A stretch of DNA of 64,000 nt. Origin: Histomonas meleagridis 2922-C6/04-290x (taxonomy: Eukaryota; Protista; Parabasalia). The position numbers and the translations under genes were made by a program. The notes under the pieces were generated by a model, which made no database searches, was not told where the DNA came from, and saw only the letters and a list, made by a program, of their open reading frames with translations. The stretch spans positions 310,001 through 374,000 of the forward strand of contig JAANOX010000278.1 of the NCBI GenBank assembly GCA_020184695.1, written 5' to 3'. Of the stretch, positions 6,778 through 30,954 are shown piece by piece; positions within the stretch are counted from its first letter, which is position 1; each line of letters starts with the position of its first letter.

Positions 6778-7065
6778 GTTTTAAGAGAATCCTATCGTTT
6801 TGAGGTACACCCCGTTATTTACAAAAGTGACGGTATAGAAATGAAGAAGAAATTTTGCATTATAATCGATATCGACATCTAGTAATTCAGTTAGAATTAA
6901 AAGGGAGATTTATGTTTCTAAGATGTTAATGAATGCGGATCAAATATACCATTGTTTTGCTATTTTGCAGAAACAGTTTTTGTTCTAATCAGTTCCTATA
7001 GAAAAATTTCAGAAAAAAACCAAATTTTCAATGAACCTCAAACTTTGTTTGGTTTACGTTTTTTA

Positions 7066-10000
7066 ATGCGCCGAAACTTCTTTCGATTGTTCCGCAGGTT
7101 CACGGATGAATCTTCAGATGCAATTGACGAATTCGGGGCGATGGTATCTATGAATCCTGTTGATGTGCAACAATGTTTTTCATTTTATCAGCAAAATTTT
7201 TCTAATCTTGATCCAAATCAAAGGTTTCCCATTAAATTAGAAAATGCAATGCTCACTTTATTAAACTCGTTTATTCCATATACAGTTACACGACTTGAAG
7301 AAAAAGCGCAAATTACGGATGAATTAAAATTTATTTCAACAACCTTAAAATTTGGGGAATATGACAAAAAATTCTCCAATCTCATTAGTCAATTTTGTGT
7401 TCAGCTTCTTAAAGTTAACTTTCATGATGAAAATTGCCTCAATTTTATGCAAACAGCATTAAAAAATGACAGCGTTTTAACGACATTTGTTTCACCCATT
7501 TATTTATCAGATATATTTATTTATTGTTTTGATGTCAAAGACAATTATTATTCAGATTTAATACTTGATACAATTCAATCATTTCAATTCAAAGTCACAT
7601 CCAAAGAAAATTTAGAAGCATTTATTGACGCCTTTCGTAGGGGATCTGTTTTAAACGTATATTCTGCTTTAAAATTCATCTTTTGTGTCACTCGATCCTT
7701 TCATCCTAATTATTTCATTAATGAGTTCTTTCCAATAATATCCAACAAAATCTATGATCTTGAATCGTTAGACTTTTTTGAATATTATCTCCAAACTAAC
7801 AACAAAGCTACATGGGACTTCTTATGTCGCTCATGTTCACCATCAAAACTTAACGAAAACTTTTTAAATTCAATGATTTCACTTTTGAACCAATTCAAAG
7901 AGAATCCGTTAATTCTCAATTTCCCTATCGGCGATTTTATCACAAACGGAATCAACTTAACGTTCTCCACACAAGAAGAGTTATTAGAAATAATTCTAAA
8001 ATTTACTGATAAGAAACGACTACAATTTTTGAAGCAATGTATTACAAGTCAATTTCATTCCAAAATCATTTATGAAATTTCTAAAAGTTTAAATGATTAT
8101 GATACAATTGCACAGTTTTGTATATTTGATATTCCAATAAATGAATTAAAACAAAAATTAGAAACTGACAAAGATTATTGTAATTTATTATATTATATTT
8201 CCACGAATTTAAAATCAGAAAAAGTTATAAACTTAATTCCAATATTACTCAAACTTTCAGACTTAAACATCTGTAAAAAGTCATTAAAGAAAATATTAAA
8301 GCAAATAAATCCGGAGAAATATATCAAAATCATCAAGAAATCATTTAAACAAAGTATTATTACAACAGATGTCTTTCAAATCTTAACCAAAATATCGAAA
8401 GAAAATGAAAAATTTGTTTCATTAATATTAACTTCCTCGAAAACCATAAAATATTTATTTAGTTCATTCCAAAACATTAACGATTTAACATTTCTAATCA
8501 CTATAATTCAAAATGGACCATATGAAATCATTGATGAATATATTAATGAACATTTTAATGAAACGATTTTAACCAAATTAAATGAGAAACAATTATATAA
8601 CTTAATGATGGGGTTACCATTTGATTCTGAATCGATTGGAATATTACGAATTCCATCATTATTAAAACATGTGAAAATTAATGAATTGTTAACACCATTC
8701 GATCGATATGTTTATGGTAAATATGGAATGAAATACATCGAAAATGATAATGGAATTGATGAATATTTAATACAATACATTGACGAAAACAAAAAATTTG
8801 TTGATATCGTAAATAACACAAAATTAATGTTAAAAATGACTGATTTGAATCAATCGTTTTTGCCAATATATCAATGCCATTTTAATATGCCGAATTCTTT
8901 CGCAAGTTTCGAAGGTAATGTTTCGATTTCGTTTTGGTTTTATATTAATCATTTGATCGGAAAAACTTTAATACTTCAAACTTCTTTCGGTGAGATATCA
9001 TATGATTGTGATGGATTAACAATATTCGATTTAATAACAATACAATGTAATATGAAAACTTGGAATATGTTAACATTAATTATGGCAAATCAAAATGTGA
9101 AGTGTTACTTGAACTCAAAAAGTGCAATTGAATTTTCAATACCGAAATTGAATTACTCAATGCAATTCGGAAGTAAAACATTCAATAATTCAATATGGTA
9201 CTTAAACTCGGAGGTTATCTCAACAAATGAAATGTTTACACCAGACGAAATCAGAAATTTGTATTTGAAAGGTTTACCTAACGTCCGGAACGATAAATAT
9301 AAAATTGCAAAAATTAATCCGAAAAATGGATTTAAATTTGTGGATTATAATGGAATTGGTAATTATTTATATGATGAAGAGTTTATCTTTTTGTTGTTAA
9401 TTGGTTGTCAAACGAAAGAAGAATTTAATGATTTATTTGAAAGTTGTTTTAATTTATATTTAAAGTCATTAATTAAAACGGAATATTTCTATTCATCAAT
9501 TCGATATATAATGATACGAAAAAAAGATTTTGTAACAACTGATTTAATCTTAAAATTATTTATTAATAACTTTAATTGTAATGATTATATTAATGTCTTC
9601 AGTGACTATCAAATTATTACATCGATTAACTTCAATTATTCGTTTTTCTTAAAGTTATTTAAGTTAAATAATAACTCGTTAACATTTTTAATGGATGTTT
9701 TAATTGATTGTTATATCTTCTTTGATATTAATAATGACTTAAAACAAATAATTTTAGATATAACAAAATTAATGATTAAAAATCATCCAAGTATATTAGA
9801 AAAATTAATTTTATATTTATCTAATTTCGAAGATAATAATTTATTTGAAATTATATTAAAAAATTTAAAACTTTTGGATTTCGACCGTTTACTATCGTTC
9901 TCGGCCGTTTTAACTGAAAAGTATTCAATTGCATTTATCAAAAAGTTGACGAAGAATTCAATCAGATTGAATAACTACAATTACAAAAGTTTAAAATTAA

Positions 10001-13000
10001 ATAAATCGATTTTTATTAAATTAATACATGAAATTGATATTTGGTGTTGTTTATTATCATTTTTAACTAATAGTTATGAAATGAATTTAGATAATTTCAT
10101 CACACAAACATCAAAAAATAATAAGATTCTAAAACTCATTTTAGATGTTTTAGCGACGTTTATCGGAATTGAAATAAAAGAAAAGGCAAAAGAAATGTTA
10201 TCATTTAAAATATTGGAAATTATTTTCTCGATTACTTCATCAGATAAAATTCTTTTGTGTACAAAACAAATTTTACGACTTTCCGTTTTAGGTCTTGATA
10301 ATTATCCTTATCAAGTAATACCTTTTAATGATAATGATAAAATAGAACAACAAATTAAGTCGCAGAAAGAAGAATATAAATTTAATTTATCATTACTTCA
10401 ATCCTTACAACTCAAAAATTTCGATTTTATTAATGAATTTAAAGAAAATAATGATGTTAAAGAAGATGACAATAATGAAGAATTGGATATTCCTGATGAA
10501 ATATTTGAATCGAAATCAATTTCATTAATTACTAATTTTAATGTGAAAATATTCGTCTCCGAATTAGTCGAATCATTGTTCATCAAAAAATTGTTTTATG
10601 TTTTTACGATTTTTGGCGCAAATGTACCATTTAAAGTTTCATTAAAAATGCACAAGAAAATAATTTTGGCATTTTTCGACCTGAAACCGAATTTGACAGA
10701 AGATGTAATGAACTCTTTGTTTGAGTTCTTGATTTTAAGGATTAATGAAGGTTGGTGGGAATCTAAAAAAGAATTAAAGGAATTGCTGCTAAAGTCAGTG
10801 AATTTGATGACGATAACAAAATCAAAAGTGTCAAAGTTATTCATATTTATAATTCTGACAAAAATTGACTCACAAAAAGTTTTCATTTCAATGTTTTCTC
10901 AAAAAATTTTCTTGAATTTTTTAGCGAATGATAAAACATTCTTTTTAAATATACAATATTTCATTTGTAAATTAAATAAAATAAAAAAACAATTAAAAGA
11001 TTTAATGGTTCAAAAATTAATTTGTTTCAAAATAGAATTTGTAAACCATTTAAAAAGTGATACATTAAATCAATGGTTTACAAATAACGATGAATTGAAA
11101 AACGCATTTGAAGAATATAATCAAAATATTAAAAAATTATGTATGAATTCATTACAATTATTACATCAAAAACGAATAGAAGTTACAAAATATCCAAAAG
11201 TATCAGCAATTAATGAAAATGATAAAATTATAATTTTAAATGCATTAAAACAAAAACTTTTTTATCGATTAAATTTAACAAATTGGGAAATAGAAAAGTC
11301 TATTTCTAGGTTATTTAAACTTAAAGCGCAATATAATTATATGTTAAATCCATCAGAAAAATTTATGGTTGTCTCTTCTCCGAACCCTTTATCAGTGCCA
11401 CAGAAATTACTTCCGTTGGTATATAACTTCAATTATCCCGAAGGCAAATTTATTGGTAAAATTCATACTCCGAAATCATTACATTCATATAAATTTAACA
11501 CAAAATTAAACGAGCTAAACGAAGAAAAGTCAGCTGCGCTTTGTTTAAATGGTTGGTTCTTACCTCCGTATGTATCAAATTGTTTGAAGGAAGTAATCAA
11601 CGCGCAAATTGAAAACGTTACATTGAATAACTGCTATTATTTGCCAACAACCGAAATTTTGGAGTCCGTTTATTTCATGAGCAGCGACACTTTTTACGTG
11701 TTGTTAAACGCGACGGTTGACGATAACGAACGTTTAATTTTGAATGAAAACGATTCAACAATGATTTGTCAATTTGCAGCTTTCGAATTACCGATTTATG
11801 GATATTATGGAAATTCTACATTATTTTGTCATCATCCATTGTTATATTTCAAATATTCTGATATAATATTAATAATTCCTCGGAGATATGCATATAAAAA
11901 CGTTTCAATTGACATATATTTAAATAACGGAATTAGCCATACGATCATTTTCAAGTCAAAAAGTGATAGAAGGAACTTTGTTTCAAAAGTGAAAATTAAG
12001 GAGTTTACAATCCCTCAAAACTTCGGAATTTCTTATGCTCAGAAATTATTGTATTCGTCCATTGAAAAAGTTTCGAAGAAATGGTCCAACCGTCAAATCT
12101 CAACGTTTAATTATTTATTATATTTAAATGTCGTAAGTGGTCGATCATTCCGTGATCTTTCACAATACCCAATCTTCCCATGGGTCCTGGGTGACTTTGA
12201 TTCAGATACGCCAAAGTCATCACGAAATTTATCAAAGCCAATGGGTGCACAAACTGAAGATCGAGCCAAACGTTTTATTGACAATTTCAATGAGATGAAC
12301 TATCATTATGGTACCCATTATTCCCACTCAGCAGCGGTTTTACATTACATGCTCCGCATCGAACCTTTTTCTCTTTACGAAGTTCACCTCCATAACGGTC
12401 TCGACCACCGCGACCGTTTATTCTGCAACATTTCAGAAAGTTGGAAAAGTGCCAGCGATTTCAATCAGTCAGATGTCAAGGAACTTATTCCGCAGTTTTA
12501 TTGTTTCCCAAATATGTTTGAATATAATAACGTGGTTGATTTGAAATGCCGTACAGATGGGTTACCATTAAATACTGTCATTTTACCAAAATGGGCAAAA
12601 CAATCAGCAGTCAAATTCATATATGAAATGCGGAAAGCACTTGAGCAATCAAATGAAATACATCTATGGATTAACTTGATATTCGGATATCAACAAAGTG
12701 GGAAAGAAGCGATTGAGTCATTAAATGTGTTTCAGCCATTATCATATTACGAAAAGTTCAAAAGTACGGAATATGATGAAAGCGAAATGAAAGCTGTTAT
12801 TGACACTGTTAATAATTTTGGTCAATGTCCGATGCAATTATTTAATGTTCAACATATTCCACGACAATTAATTGAAGTCATAGATATTCATAATTGTGAA
12901 TTAAATATCACAAAACTAATTACTCTAAATCCGATCCCAAATTATATTAGAATTAATGGCGATGAGATAATTTGCTCCAATTTCGATTTGTTCGAATATT

Positions 13001-13845
13001 CGACGGATTATTTATACGCCGCTAAATTAATTAACCGCAAATTCATTTCAATCGATTCAATTAGCGGTGGTTTCATTCAAAAAATACCGGTTTTCACTTT
13101 CGGTAAACTTCACAAATTGGCGTTCTCAAGTCAGCACTTTTTGGTATGCGCTTCTTCATTTAAGAAGCTTCTTTTGTTCGATGCATCAACCGGTTATTTC
13201 ATCAGGAGCAAAGAACTTCCTGATACAATTAAACAGATTCAGTTTGATGAGGTTTATAATATCATATTTGTTATAACTGAAAATCAAATCTTCGCATTTC
13301 GCCTTGACCTTAAAGAAATAGCATCAGCAACTTACGAGATACCTTTCAATTGTATCTCTGCAACTAGTTCGTCACAATGGTATCGATATCCATTTGTTAT
13401 CGCGGGACATAATGACGGTAGTTGCTATATATGGCGCATAAGCTTCATGTCTGACGTCCCTACTTTTGAAAGCTTGTTCGTTTTCAAGGTTCAAGATTCT
13501 TCAATATCAATTATCAAAAGTTTCGACTCCGATAAGGCTATACTCGCAATGTGCGCTAATGGACAGTTATTCCTCGCTTCAGCTGCAATGGTAAGACATA
13601 AGTTACTTCGTTCAAAATATTTTTGCGAATGTCCATGTTGTGGTACGAAATCGCCAGCAAGTCTCTTTTGCTGTTCTGTGTGTGGTCTGTACTGTTGCAA
13701 GAGCTGTAGGATAAGTAGAATGCCAAATATATGCTCGAGATGCGCAAAATTCCAAGGCGATCTTATTGAAGAGTCAAGTGATTCATCAAATAGGAAAATA
13801 AGAAGAGAAAGCGTATACTCAGATAGCATTGGCAATGAAGTGTAA
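7066..13845 (+). CDS. Beige/BEACH-domain protein (ConA-like, PH, BEACH, WD-like repeats, C-terminal Cys-rich finger)
   Basis: BEACH motifs [70 protein letters not shown]. First ATG is at 7066. Confidence 0.95.
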   Translation: [2259 protein letters not shown]

Positions 13846-27130: not shown

Positions 27131-28258
27131 ATGTCTCAAAACAAAGATATACACAAGATGCTCGTTAAAGAGCTCAAAGAAAAGCTAACCGAACTTGGTG
27201 TTGAACCATCGACATTTGCTAAACTCAAAAAAGCTCAATTAGTCAAATTACTTGAAGAGAAACTCGCAGAGGAAACAGCCGAAGAAAGCGAAGAAGAACC
27301 AGCTCCTGAAACTAACGAAGAACCTCATGAAGAAAATAAAGGCGACATCCCACCATCTTTACCTCCTGCATCTGATGAAAATAAAGGCGACATCCCACCA
27401 TCTTTACCACCTGCACCTGAAGAAAATAATAACGATATTCCACCTCCATTACCTCCAACACCTGCAGCTATTTCCGAACCCGTCAAAATAAGTTCAATAA
27501 TCAGTCCATTCCAGTCAAAATCTCAAAACACATCCGAAGAAAAGAATGGCCCACCCAAGGGCATGAACTTCCAATTTGATCTTGCCCATTTAACAGCACT
27601 TGATCCCAATCATTATTCCCAATCCGATGTTCAAGATTCCAATCTTCTTTTACAAATGGCCACTTCCTCTCTCAACCAACTATTTGCGCAACTCAATTCA
27701 CTCGAACGCGAGGGAGATAACCGCGTCAAACTTCCCAATGATGTCATTAGTCTTCCACGATCTCAGCCAATTCCAACCGAGAAAGTCATGACGCGTTGGG
27801 AAGCTTTCAAGAAAGAGAAAGGGCTCAAGACACAAGCGAAAGAGAAAATTGTCCAAGATGAAGCCACAGGCGAATGGCGCCTTCGCTATGGCTACAAACG
27901 CGCGAACGCGCCAAACCAAGATTGGCTGATCGAAGTTCCTAATGGTTATGAAGGCGATCCATTCGAGAAGCGCGAGAACAAACGAAAGGAGAGCATCAAA
28001 GAGCAAAAGAAGAGAGAACGAAGGAACAAAAATAGAATCGCAAGAGCGAAGTTGGACATTTCGAACGTGTCTGCTAAAGGAAGTTATACTAAGGAAACTA
28101 TAAGAACTGCAATTAAGGCTTCAGAACACCCAACGTCATCAGCGTCAATGAACCAATTTAACAAGCTGGAGAATAAGCCGCCAATATTCGAGGAAGGAAG
28201 TAAGCTGCCGAAGATATTCGATAGAAATAAAGGAAAAAAGAAAAATGGAAGAAAATAG
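27131..28258 (+). CDS. RRS1: Ribosome biogenesis regulatory protein RRS1 with an N-terminal SAP/HeH-like and Pro-rich extension
   Basis: FDLAHLTALDPN, LPRSQPIPTEK, TRWEAFKKEKGL, EWRLRYGYKRAN, WLIEVP, STASM-like SSASMNQF. Confidence 0.85.
   Translation: MSQNKDIHKMLVKELKEKLTELGVEPSTFAKLKKAQLVKLLEEKLAEETAEESEEEPAPETNEEPHEENKGDIPPSLPPASDENKGDIPPSLPPAPEENNNDIPPPLPPTPAAISEPVKISSIISPFQSKSQNTSEEKNGPPKGMNFQFDLAHLTALDPNHYSQSDVQDSNLLLQMATSSLNQLFAQLNSLEREGDNRVKLPNDVISLPRSQPIPTEKVMTRWEAFKKEKGLKTQAKEKIVQDEATGEWRLRYGYKRANAPNQDWLIEVPNGYEGDPFEKRENKRKESIKEQKKRERRNKNRIARAKLDISNVSAKGSYTKETIRTAIKASEHPTSSASMNQFNKLENKPPIFEEGSKLPKIFDRNKGKKKNGRK
27329..27463 (+). repeat. 45-bp coding tandem repeat (EENKGDIPPSLPPAx), 3 copies
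   Basis: gaaaataa anchors at 27332, 27377 and 27422. Confidence 0.85.
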
Positions 28259-29377: not shown

Positions 29378-29646
29378 AATTTTATTAAAACATATTAAAA
29401 ATTATTAAAACATATTATAAATTATTCAAATGAATAGTTTTTGCATTAACATCAATCCCTTCTTTATCTAAAAGTAATTTTACGATTTCTATATTATTAT
29501 TTCTAACTGCTATATGAAGTGCTGTTTCAAATTATTAAAACATATTTTAAATTATCAAAACATATTACGAATCATTAAATCATATTTCAAATTATTAAAA
29601 CATATTTTAAATTATTAAAACATATTCCAAATTATTAAAACATAAT
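29378..29646. repeat. 20-bp minisatellite (aaattattaaaacatattNN): 6 copies at 29529-29646 and about 2.5 copies at 29378-29430
   Basis: Tandem units read directly from the sequence. Confidence 0.85.
29430..29528 (-). pseudogene. Isolated single ankyrin repeat (99 bp)
   Basis: Translates ETALHIAVRNNNIEIVKLLLDKEGIDVNAKTIH, a canonical TALHxA...IVKLLL...DVN ankyrin consensus; no ATG and a stop follows shortly. Confidence 0.8.
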
Positions 29647-29730
29647 ATGTTATTTGCTTTTTAACTTGTATAGATGGCTCAAATAAATTTGTTATGATGT
29701 TTGATTTGAGACATGTGATGTGAAACATTA

Positions 29731-30954
29731 ATGAAGCCACCAAATGATCCGCATTTCCTGACTCCAGATGGAAAAGAAAAATTAAAAGTGATACTTGAAG
29801 AGTCAGATGACCCAATGAGTTTTATTGAATCTCTTCATCATTGCGAACATTATGATTTTTCTCAATATTCAAAAGTTTTTCAAATTGGAGATTTTAGTGG
29901 ATTTGACGCTTCAAGGATATTTGAAAAATATATCGAACAGCAACACCAAACAATCAAAAATAAGATAAGTACACTATATCCTGATCAATTGAAAGAGTTA
30001 CTCAAACAACTTCAGCAATATTCAGATATTCCTATCTTCCATGACCTCATCAAGGATGTTCTTGCACGGATGCGCGAAGTTCCTAAGTGGTTTGAAATTC
30101 CAGAATCAATCAAATCAGATTTATCACCTCCAGATCAACTCAGAGTTTTTTCTGATCAACCCAAAGAATTTAAGCTTTGGCTTGAGTCCGTTTTTAATGA
30201 GAGTATGTGTAATTTCCAAGAAGTTGATGATTTCTCATATCTTCATTTATTCCAACAAATTTCAGAGTTCTGTTTTCATAAGCGACAAATGTATCAAATA
30301 GTTGTCAACTTTTGCGAGAAGAAATTTTTAGAAACATATCATCCCATCTATTGTGTGATCAGGATTCGTCTATCGCTTTACAATTCCCCTCTTTCCCGTA
30401 TAGATTCTGCGCGTCCTCTCTCGTATTTGGTCACGAAGGCCGTCAGCGGCGATTGCGAGGTGAATTTCACTGAGATTGAAAAGGCGGCGACCGTTTGCGG
30501 CGCATCATCTCAAATTGTTTTGTCACTTCCGAACTTTACGATGAAATATCCCATTAAAGATTATATAAAAGCATTTGGTGTTACGCCACGAGACAAAATG
30601 ATTTGGTCGAAACATTTGAATACTGGAAATTCAGATGCGGTTGATTTTATGAAAAGAACTCCTTTTTTCGCTCGTATCATAGGGATATCAGTGATTCAAG
30701 GAATAAAGCTGAATGGCGATCTTTTCATCACGTTAAAGGATTGCCAGCCTCAATGCGACGTTGCATATTTCATGTGCAGAAGATACAAAACCGAAAACGA
30801 TTCAATTTTGAGAGAGTGGGCCTCAAAAAGTGGATCGGTGTTCATCGACTATTTGACACTTTGTATATCGAAGAAAATGAAATTACCGGATATACAAGTG
30901 CCGGAACTAACAAAAGAACAAGAGGCTATTTATAACGCCTTTTTGCAAAAATGA
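29731..30954 (+). CDS. NELF-B/COBRA1-like protein (negative elongation factor B)
   Basis: Colinear blocks resemble human NELF-B as I recall it: KEKLKVILEESDDPMSFIE ~ GEDLKETLTNCTEPLKAIE; LKELLKQ...IPIFHDLIKDVLARMREVP ~ LEDLLEK...MPSLQPVVMCVMKHLPKVP; MYQIVVNFCEKKFLETYHPIYCVIR ~ LYDMVLQFLRTLFLRTRNVHYCTLR. Confidence 0.72.
   Translation: MKPPNDPHFLTPDGKEKLKVILEESDDPMSFIESLHHCEHYDFSQYSKVFQIGDFSGFDASRIFEKYIEQQHQTIKNKISTLYPDQLKELLKQLQQYSDIPIFHDLIKDVLARMREVPKWFEIPESIKSDLSPPDQLRVFSDQPKEFKLWLESVFNESMCNFQEVDDFSYLHLFQQISEFCFHKRQMYQIVVNFCEKKFLETYHPIYCVIRIRLSLYNSPLSRIDSARPLSYLVTKAVSGDCEVNFTEIEKAATVCGASSQIVLSLPNFTMKYPIKDYIKAFGVTPRDKMIWSKHLNTGNSDAVDFMKRTPFFARIIGISVIQGIKLNGDLFITLKDCQPQCDVAYFMCRRYKTENDSILREWASKSGSVFIDYLTLCISKKMKLPDIQVPELTKEQEAIYNAFLQK

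What the first reader, a model, noticed from the sequence alone, without database searches (positions are those of the whole stretch)
29731..30954. Probable NELF-B (COBRA1) homologue in a parabasalid
Seen: at least five colinear blocks matching the N-terminal half of NELF-B as I recall it, including the YxxVxxF...FL.T....YCxxR motif and D.......L after it. Known: NELF enforces RNA polymerase II promoter-proximal pausing in animals and is absent from yeasts and plants. NELF-B/CD-like proteins have been reported in some unicellular eukaryotes. Inference: a NELF core in a metamonad, working with the unusual IBP39/Inr promoter system (an IBD gene is in this window), could mean an ancient pausing or elongation checkpoint that has not been studied in trichomonads.
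Basis: inference. Interest (0 to 1): 0.72.

Follow-up and report, generated by a model that had tools for sequence, protein, structure and literature searches.

The report
Divergent NELF-B gene in a parabasalid
This gene encodes a short, very divergent relative of NELF-B, the scaffold of the complex that pauses RNA polymerase II in animals; it is the partner that a published survey did not find in trichomonads, although that survey did find the companion subunit NELF-C/D there.

Summary
It belongs to a parabasalid family of about 400 aa, all annotated 'hypothetical', including T. vaginalis TVAG_126200, T. foetus TRFO_09555 and T. musculus M9Y10_023560. No member matches Pfam COBRA1 on its own. 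Profile methods are decisive for the N-terminal 250 residues. hhalign against 17 NELF-B proteins gives probability 98.4%, E 6e-15. In an exhaustive search of 1.84 billion proteins, the only four hits outside the family all carry the COBRA1 domain. NELF-B is the only PDB sequence hit (E 6e-6). The AlphaFold model (pLDDT 82) has NELF-B chains as its six best structural matches (Z 11.9-14.7; next Z 8.4). The C-terminal 160-180 residues form a confident helical repeat with no specific similarity to NELF-B. The protein is about 170 residues shorter than animal NELF-B. The conserved part corresponds to the NELF-C-binding region of human NELF-B. The candidate lists of Chivu et al. contain parabasalid NELF-C/D but no metamonad NELF-B, so this fills that gap. 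Function as a minimal B+C/D core NELF is inferred, and transcription of this gene was not shown. The scan holds another, unchecked 'NELF-B-like' note on other DNA of this genome.

The parts
29731..30954 (+). Complete coding sequence, 407 aa plus TGA stop; NELF-B-like protein
   Evidence: ORF list. Full-length orthologues of 400-415 aa with the same start and end in 13 other parabasalid sequences.
29746..30486 (+). [quoted passage not shown]
   Evidence: hhalign probability 98.4%, E 6e-15. N-half only: E 2.6e-17. PDB profile search hits only NELF-B, E 6e-6. Residue map.
29794..29835 (+). N-terminal signature L22-x5-P28-x3-I32-x2-L35 (LEESDDPMSFIESL), matching NELF-B L22..P27..I31..F34
   Evidence: L, P and I are invariant in both families. 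This segment lies outside the Pfam COBRA1 model, which starts at about aa 100 of NELF-B.
30292..30363 (+).
   Evidence: Alignments. R211/R227 is invariant in both families; F199/F215 and Y207/Y223 are conserved in both.
30406..30951 (+). C-terminal helical-repeat domain (aa 226-407); confidently folded but not specifically NELF-B-like
   Evidence: Model of the domain alone has pLDDT 90.8. Foldseek best E 0.37. VIA best Z 5.5, with NELF-B absent from the top 50. hhalign C-half against NELF-B C-half: E 0.13.
29724..29729 (+). Initiator-like ACATTA just upstream of the ATG, at 29724-29729 (possible transcription start; inference only)
   Evidence: Read directly from the sequence. Resemblance to the trichomonad Inr consensus TCA(+1)Y(T/A) is from my own knowledge. 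No transcript data.

Best explanation
The gene encodes the parabasalid orthologue of NELF-B (COBRA1), highly diverged and shortened to 407 aa. [quoted passage not shown] Inferred: it uses the conserved N-terminal module to bind the NELF-C/D (TH1-like) protein that a published survey lists for T. vaginalis and T. foetus. This would form a two-subunit 'core NELF' that sits on the Pol II-DSIF (Spt4/Spt5) elongation complex and slows or stabilises early elongation. The C-terminal half, which in animals helps clamp NELF-E, has been shortened and rebuilt. That fits the absence of NELF-E and NELF-A candidates from parabasalids in the same survey. My confidence in homology to NELF-B is about 0.93. My confidence in the core-NELF scaffold role is about 0.6.
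For: Sequence: hhalign of 14 parabasalid against 17 NELF-B sequences gives probability 98.4%, E 6e-15, 245 columns. The exhaustive profile search of 1.84e9 proteins gave 21 hits; 17 are the protein's own family, and the other 4 (E 4.6e-6 to 6.6e-4) all carry Pfam COBRA1 at E 1e-38 to 6e-68, including Creolimax NELF-B. The PDB profile search finds NELF-B only (E 6e-6). The reciprocal NELF-B HMM picks out only this ORF in the window (E 4e-9). Structure: AF2 without templates, pLDDT 81.9. The five best Foldseek hits are all NELF-B, E 7e-6 to 1.3e-4, with the next hit at 0.044. VIA against all representative chains: NELF-B Z 11.9 against 8.2 for the next. Second look: six NELF-B chains at Z 11.9-14.7, 336-388 residues aligned, model 5-407 to chain 9-543. 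Conservation: 14 full-length orthologues at 27-60% identity, including TVAG_126200, TRFO_09555 and M9Y10_023560. Partner: the Chivu et al. supplement lists NELF-C/D candidates from T. vaginalis (XP_001298305.1) and T. foetus (TRFO_23780 and one more) but no metamonad NELF-B, NELF-A or NELF-E. [quoted passage not shown] An unchecked scan note reports an Spt5 homologue in this genome.
Against: No family member reaches Pfam COBRA1 even at E 10. The C-terminal 160-180 residues show no specific sequence or fold similarity to NELF-B. Whole-chain superpositions have high rmsd (8-12 A) and TM about 0.4, and helical solenoids can give Z up to about 13-14 without homology (tool note). Transcription of this gene was not shown: the runs that hold it behave like DNA. 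NELF-C/D was not verified in this genome. No interaction or pausing data exist for any parabasalid. The same survey's complete CDK9-clade sequence file (file 28) contains no parabasalid sequence, so the canonical pause-release kinase may be lacking.
Confidence: 0.7

Rival explanations
1. It is a true descendant of NELF-B that no longer works in pausing. The conserved N-terminal module still binds the TH1-like NELF-C/D protein, but the pair serves another nuclear role, such as RNA processing or termination, and the rebuilt C-terminal domain recruits lineage-specific partners.
For: The C-terminal 40% is unrelated in sequence and has no specific fold match. No NELF-A, NELF-E or CDK9-clade parabasalid sequences appear in the survey's files. 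Trichomonad Pol II initiation is unusual (Inr/IBP39, non-canonical CTD; my own knowledge).
Against: [quoted passage not shown] The N-terminal module and overall solenoid shape are retained under long-term constraint across Parabasalia.
Confidence: 0.22
2. It is an unrelated helical-repeat (HEAT/ARM-like) protein, and its resemblance to NELF-B is generic solenoid similarity plus chance motif matches.
For: No Pfam COBRA1 hit. Pairwise identity about 16%. Structural Z of 12-15 lies within the range sometimes seen for unrelated helical repeats (tool note). The C-terminal domain matches many repeat proteins equally weakly.
Against: Profile-profile E 6e-15, with mismatched-half controls at 0.04-0.38. 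Among 1.84e9 proteins the only outsiders at E<=1e-3 are four COBRA1 proteins. NELF-B is the only PDB sequence at E<=1. Shuffled controls reach at most 5.7 bits against 24-46 bits for real members. Five positions are invariant in both families. NELF-B stands 3.5-6 Z units above the next fold.
Confidence: 0.04
3. It is a FANCC-like protein (Fanconi anaemia core complex subunit).
For: 7kzp_C is the best match that is not NELF-B: Foldseek E 0.044 and VIA Z 8.2-8.4 over 304-333 residues.
Against: It lies well below NELF-B in every search. No sequence-level hit to it appeared in the PDB or exhaustive searches.
Confidence: 0.01

Closest known systems
NELF-B / COBRA1 (human NELFB, e.g. PDB 8jj6_A, 8w8e_V, 7pks_V; Pfam PF06209)
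   Same: The N-terminal 250 residues are homologous (E 6e-15), with shared invariant L, P, I, R and D positions and the Y..V..F....FL.T....YC..R block. The fold is an all-helical curved solenoid that aligns end to end (model 5-407 to chain 9-543, Z up to 14.7). The lineage also has a reported NELF-C/D partner.
   Different: 407 aa against about 580 aa. No hit to the Pfam COBRA1 model. About 16% identity. The C-terminal 160-180 residues have no detectable specific similarity. No NELF-E or NELF-A partner is reported in the lineage. No functional data.
NELF-B of unicellular eukaryotes (e.g. Creolimax fragrantissima EP01134_P001544 = P0025; Dictyostelium, Capsaspora and heterolobosean entries in Chivu et al.)
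   Same: A protist NELF-B occurring with NELF-C/D as a 'core' complex. These proteins were the direct outside-family hits of the parabasalid profile (E 6.6e-4 for Creolimax).
   Different: Those proteins are 580-740 aa and match Pfam COBRA1 strongly (E 1e-38 to 1e-65). The parabasalid family is shorter and falls below Pfam detection.
NELF-C/D (TH1-like, PDB 5l3x_B, 7pks_W)
   Same: Also a helical-repeat NELF subunit. The C-terminal domain alone aligns weakly with NELF-C residues 288-555 (Z 5.2 and 4.8, about 170 residues).
   Different: That similarity is in the noise range. There is no sequence similarity. Parabasalid NELF-C/D candidates are separate proteins.

Membership tests
NELF-B / COBRA1 | Match to the curated Pfam model PF06209 (COBRA1) at or above its gathering score (22 bits) | tested here: not met
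   No COBRA1 hit at E<=10 for the window protein or any of 11 family members scanned. This is an operational criterion. The model begins at about residue 100 of NELF-B and so leaves out the segment that is best conserved here.
NELF-B / COBRA1 | Statistically significant homology to bona fide NELF-B proteins by profile methods | tested here: met
   hhalign probability 98.4%, E 6e-15, 245 columns. N-half only: E 2.6e-17, with null controls. PDB profile search finds NELF-B only, E 6e-6. NELF-B HMM: 28.7 bits, E 4e-9 in the window, with shuffles at most 5.7 bits.
NELF-B / COBRA1 | Reciprocity: NELF-B is the nearest family outside the protein's own family in an exhaustive search | tested here: met
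   Of 21 hits at E<=1e-3 among 1.84e9 proteins, the 4 outside the family all carry COBRA1.
NELF-B / COBRA1 | Whole-chain fold like solved NELF-B | tested here: met
   The five best Foldseek hits are NELF-B, E 7e-6. VIA Z 11.9-14.7 for six NELF-B chains, next Z 8.4. Caveat: rmsd is 8-12 A, and helical repeats inflate Z.
NELF-B / COBRA1 | Homology of the middle and C-terminal regions (human residues about 290-520, which with the N-terminal region hold NELF-E) | tested here: inconclusive
   C-half against C-half hhalign E 0.13. Domain alone: Foldseek best E 0.37 and VIA best Z 5.5, without NELF-B in the list. Whole-model alignments nevertheless run to the last residue.
NELF complex (core B + C/D) | Co-occurrence with a NELF-C/D (TH1-like) subunit | tested here: inconclusive
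   The lineage meets it according to the literature: the Chivu et al. NELF-C/D candidate file holds T. vaginalis XP_001298305.1 and T. foetus TRFO_23780 plus one more. I could not verify those sequences or search this genome for TH1 with the tools available.
NELF complex (core B + C/D) | Physical association with NELF-C/D and Pol II-DSIF; effect on promoter-proximal pausing | not testable with these tools
   This needs co-purification, co-folding of two chains, ChIP or PRO-seq. None is available here.

The most novel reading that the evidence does not exclude
Parabasalids run a minimal two-subunit NELF. The B subunit keeps only the ancestral NELF-C/D-binding N-terminal module and carries a lineage-specific C-terminal domain. 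The pair acts on a Pol II that has a non-canonical CTD, Inr/IBP39-driven initiation and perhaps no CDK9-type release kinase. That would be an early-elongation checkpoint independent of P-TEFb, close to the state in the last eukaryotic common ancestor.
Probability: 0.3. Interest if true: 0.72.

Novelty: new member of a known kind. Interest (0 to 1): 0.5.

Why it matters
The broadest published survey of NELF evolution (Chivu et al., PMC11482795) argues that a NELF-B plus NELF-C/D core dates to the last eukaryotic common ancestor. Its candidate lists, however, hold no NELF-B from any metamonad, while they do hold parabasalid NELF-C/D. That leaves an orphan subunit. This family supplies the missing partner and extends detectable NELF-B to Metamonada. 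It also shows that Pfam-based scans under-detect NELF-B, because the Pfam model omits the most conserved N-terminal 100 residues. Finally, it names a concrete gene (TVAG_126200) in a transfectable parasite where a minimal NELF could be tested. The result is incremental rather than surprising, since the ancestral-core idea is already published.

Tried and rejected
1. Single-sequence Pfam and PDB searches found nothing relevant.
2. The ESM Atlas feature and structure look-up gave only sub-threshold DUF6138 leads (score 0.84, TM about 0.3), built on the Atlas's own poor model (pLDDT 0.53). I rejected these as noise.
3. Folding and searching the C-terminal domain alone gave no specific match.
4. 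Expression check: the five runs that hold the locus are only guessed to be RNA. Their contigs run through intergenic DNA into the neighbouring kinase gene, so they say nothing about transcription.
5. A word search with the most divergent member, P0014, returned only itself. T. vaginalis membership was instead established by cluster look-up.
6. Gene neighbourhood: ALG11, a ubiquitin hydrolase, an AAA_18 kinase-like protein, RRS1, a Ser/Thr kinase, RPL19e, a Ras-like GTPase, a hydrolase and an Hsp70-like protein. There is no functional linkage.
9. Table S1 of Chivu et al. encodes presence and absence by cell colour, which is lost in the text copy. I used the candidate FASTA files instead.

Full report
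OBSERVATION. The window holds an ATG-to-TGA ORF at 29731..30954 on the + strand, encoding 407 aa. An in-frame TGA lies 15 nt upstream (29716-18), and an initiator-like ACATTA sits just upstream of the ATG, at 29724-29729. GC content rises from about 0.25 in the flanks to 0.35-0.39 inside the ORF. The N-terminus and the stop align with those of the homologues, so the gene model is sound and needs no intron.

FIRST-PASS SEARCHES. On its own the protein matches nothing informative. Pfam gives no COBRA1 hit even at E 10, and phmmer against PDB sequences finds only noise. The ESM Atlas look-up gave sub-threshold leads on a poor model. The word-index search found six relatives of about 400 aa, one of them T. 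foetus TRFO_09555 at 51% identity. None of the seven sequences hits COBRA1 individually.

PROFILE EVIDENCE. A profile of those seven sequences put human NELF-B first among PDB sequences (E 6e-4; profile 12-223 against NELF-B 13-255; next hit E 0.06). Because the family scans and word search left the protein open, I ran the one exhaustive search. Among 1.84 billion representatives there were 21 hits at E<=1e-3. Seventeen belong to the protein's own family. The other four (P0021, P0022, P0023, P0025; E 4.6e-6 to 6.6e-4) all carry Pfam COBRA1 at E 1e-38 to 6e-68, and one is the Creolimax NELF-B listed by Chivu et al.. I then aligned 14 full-length parabasalid members (A2) and 17 diverse NELF-B proteins (A3). 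hhalign gives probability 98.4%, E 6e-15, over 245 columns (family 4-249 against NELF-B 13-286). With A2, NELF-B chains are the only PDB sequences at E<=1, at E 6e-6.

SPLIT CONTROLS. N-half against N-half gives E 2.6e-17. C-half against C-half gives 0.13. The two mismatched pairings give 0.38 and 0.044.

RECIPROCAL TEST. An HMM of A3 scores this ORF at 28.7 bits (E 4e-9), against 4.8 bits for the next of 181 open segments in the window. Ten of the 14 family members score 24-46 bits, while 280 shuffled controls reach at most 5.7 bits.

SHARED RESIDUES. Pairwise identity is 38/245. Of 35 positions conserved at 70% or more in both families, 14 are identical and 7 similar. L22/L22, P28/P27, I32/I31, R211/R227 and D225/D246 are invariant in both.

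WHY PFAM MISSES IT. In canonical NELF-B the Pfam COBRA1 model starts at about residue 100 (P0023: residues 100-431 map to model positions 1-347). The strongest similarity here falls on NELF-B profile positions 11-123, so the best-conserved segment is largely outside the model.

STRUCTURE. AlphaFold2 without templates, using the seven-sequence alignment, gave an all-helical model (mean pLDDT 81.9, pTM 0.73). The five best Foldseek hits in the PDB are all NELF-B chains (E 7e-6 to 1.3e-4, probability 1.00); the next is 7kzp_C at E 0.044. VIA-align against every representative chain puts NELF-B 7pks_V first (Z 11.9, 336 aligned), with the next at Z 8.2. A second look puts six NELF-B chains at ranks 1-6 (Z 11.9-14.7, 336-388 aligned, model 5-407 to chain 9-543), then 7kzp_C at Z 8.4. 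Caveats: rmsd is 8-12 A, TM is about 0.4, and helical repeats can reach such Z values without homology. The structural result is therefore corroboration, not the main proof.

C-TERMINAL DOMAIN. Residues 226-407 folded alone give pLDDT 90.8, but the model has no specific neighbour. Foldseek's best E is 0.37. VIA's best Z is 5.5, NELF-B is not in the top 50, and NELF-C appears at a noise-level Z of 5.2 and 4.8. What is shown, then, is homology of the N-terminal 60%. The C-terminal 40% is a helical repeat in the equivalent position, about 170 residues shorter overall than in animals, and its relationship to NELF-B is undemonstrated.

DISTRIBUTION. The family includes T. vaginalis G3 TVAG_126200 / XP_001321682.1 (405 aa, 31% identical), T. 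foetus TRFO_09555, T. musculus M9Y10_023560, and unnamed metagenome and run-assembly sequences. All that carry a name are called 'hypothetical'. Constant length and 24 invariant columns across members at 27-60% identity argue for a functional, constrained protein.

LITERATURE. No paper in the library combines NELF-B or 'negative elongation factor' with Trichomonas, and none mentions these locus tags. Chivu et al. [quoted passage not shown] Their final NELF-B candidate file is stored complete and contains no Parabasalia, Fornicata, Preaxostyla or Barthelona entries. Their NELF-C/D candidate file contains T. vaginalis XP_001298305.1, T. foetus TRFO_23780 and a second T. foetus protein. No parabasalid tag occurs in the NELF-A or NELF-E files, nor in the complete CDK9-clade sequence file (file 28). 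Vos et al. [quoted passage not shown]

MECHANISM (INFERRED). The part conserved in parabasalids is the NELF-C-binding module, and the part that has diverged contributes to the NELF-E cradle. This matches a lineage that has C/D but no detectable E or A. The most likely role is scaffold of a two-subunit core NELF acting on Pol II-DSIF. An unchecked scan note reports a divergent Spt5 in this genome. Whether such a complex pauses polymerase in an organism with Inr/IBP39 initiation and a non-canonical CTD (my own knowledge) is untested.

EXPRESSION. Not shown. Four runs of the same organism hold the locus with no differences across the gene, but their contigs span intergenic DNA and the next gene, so they behave like DNA.

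CONTEXT. The neighbours are unrelated housekeeping genes.

VERDICT. This is a new, highly divergent member of a known family. It closes a gap in the published distribution and gives a testable gene in T. vaginalis. Interest is moderate, because an ancestral NELF core is already proposed in the literature. The scan also holds an unchecked first-reader note of another 'NELF-B-like' ORF on other DNA of this genome (s1-331009), which I could not examine.

Noticed in passing
window 29382-29430 and 29525-29644: A 20-bp tandem repeat (unit TTTCAAATTATTAAAACATA), with 6 copies plus a 2.5-copy array, lies 90-350 nt upstream of the start codon. The unit occurs nowhere else in the window. In runs of the same organism, summed contig depth there is about 6.6e5 against about 126 across the gene, with many different flanks. 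It is therefore a high-copy repeat in this genome.
   Followed up: partly
window 27131-28258 (+): An RRS1 ribosome-biogenesis homologue (Pfam E 7e-39) carries an N-terminal extension with three proline-rich 'NKGDIPPSLPPA'-like repeats.
   Followed up: no
model of window 29731-30951: The best structural neighbour that is not NELF-B is 7kzp_C, a chain of the human Fanconi anaemia core complex that I take to be FANCC (Z 8.2-8.4, 304-333 residues aligned). This hints that NELF-B and that chain share a solenoid architecture.
   Followed up: no
window 30406-30951 (aa 226-407): The C-terminal domain alone aligns over about 170 residues with NELF-C residues 288-555 (7pks_W Z 5.2; 5l3x_B Z 4.8). This is within noise, but it is curious for a NELF-B relative.
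   Followed up: partly
window 6952-13845 (+): A very long ORF of 2,297 aa, not examined.
   Followed up: no
Chivu et al. supplementary files (PMC11482795): No 'Parabasalia' tag occurs in any of the CDK9 files listed (for example file 28, the complete CDK9-clade sequence file) or in the cyclin T files listed, although heterolobosean and euglenozoan entries do. Several of those files were cut when stored. Parabasalids may lack a clear P-TEFb orthologue in that survey.
   Followed up: no
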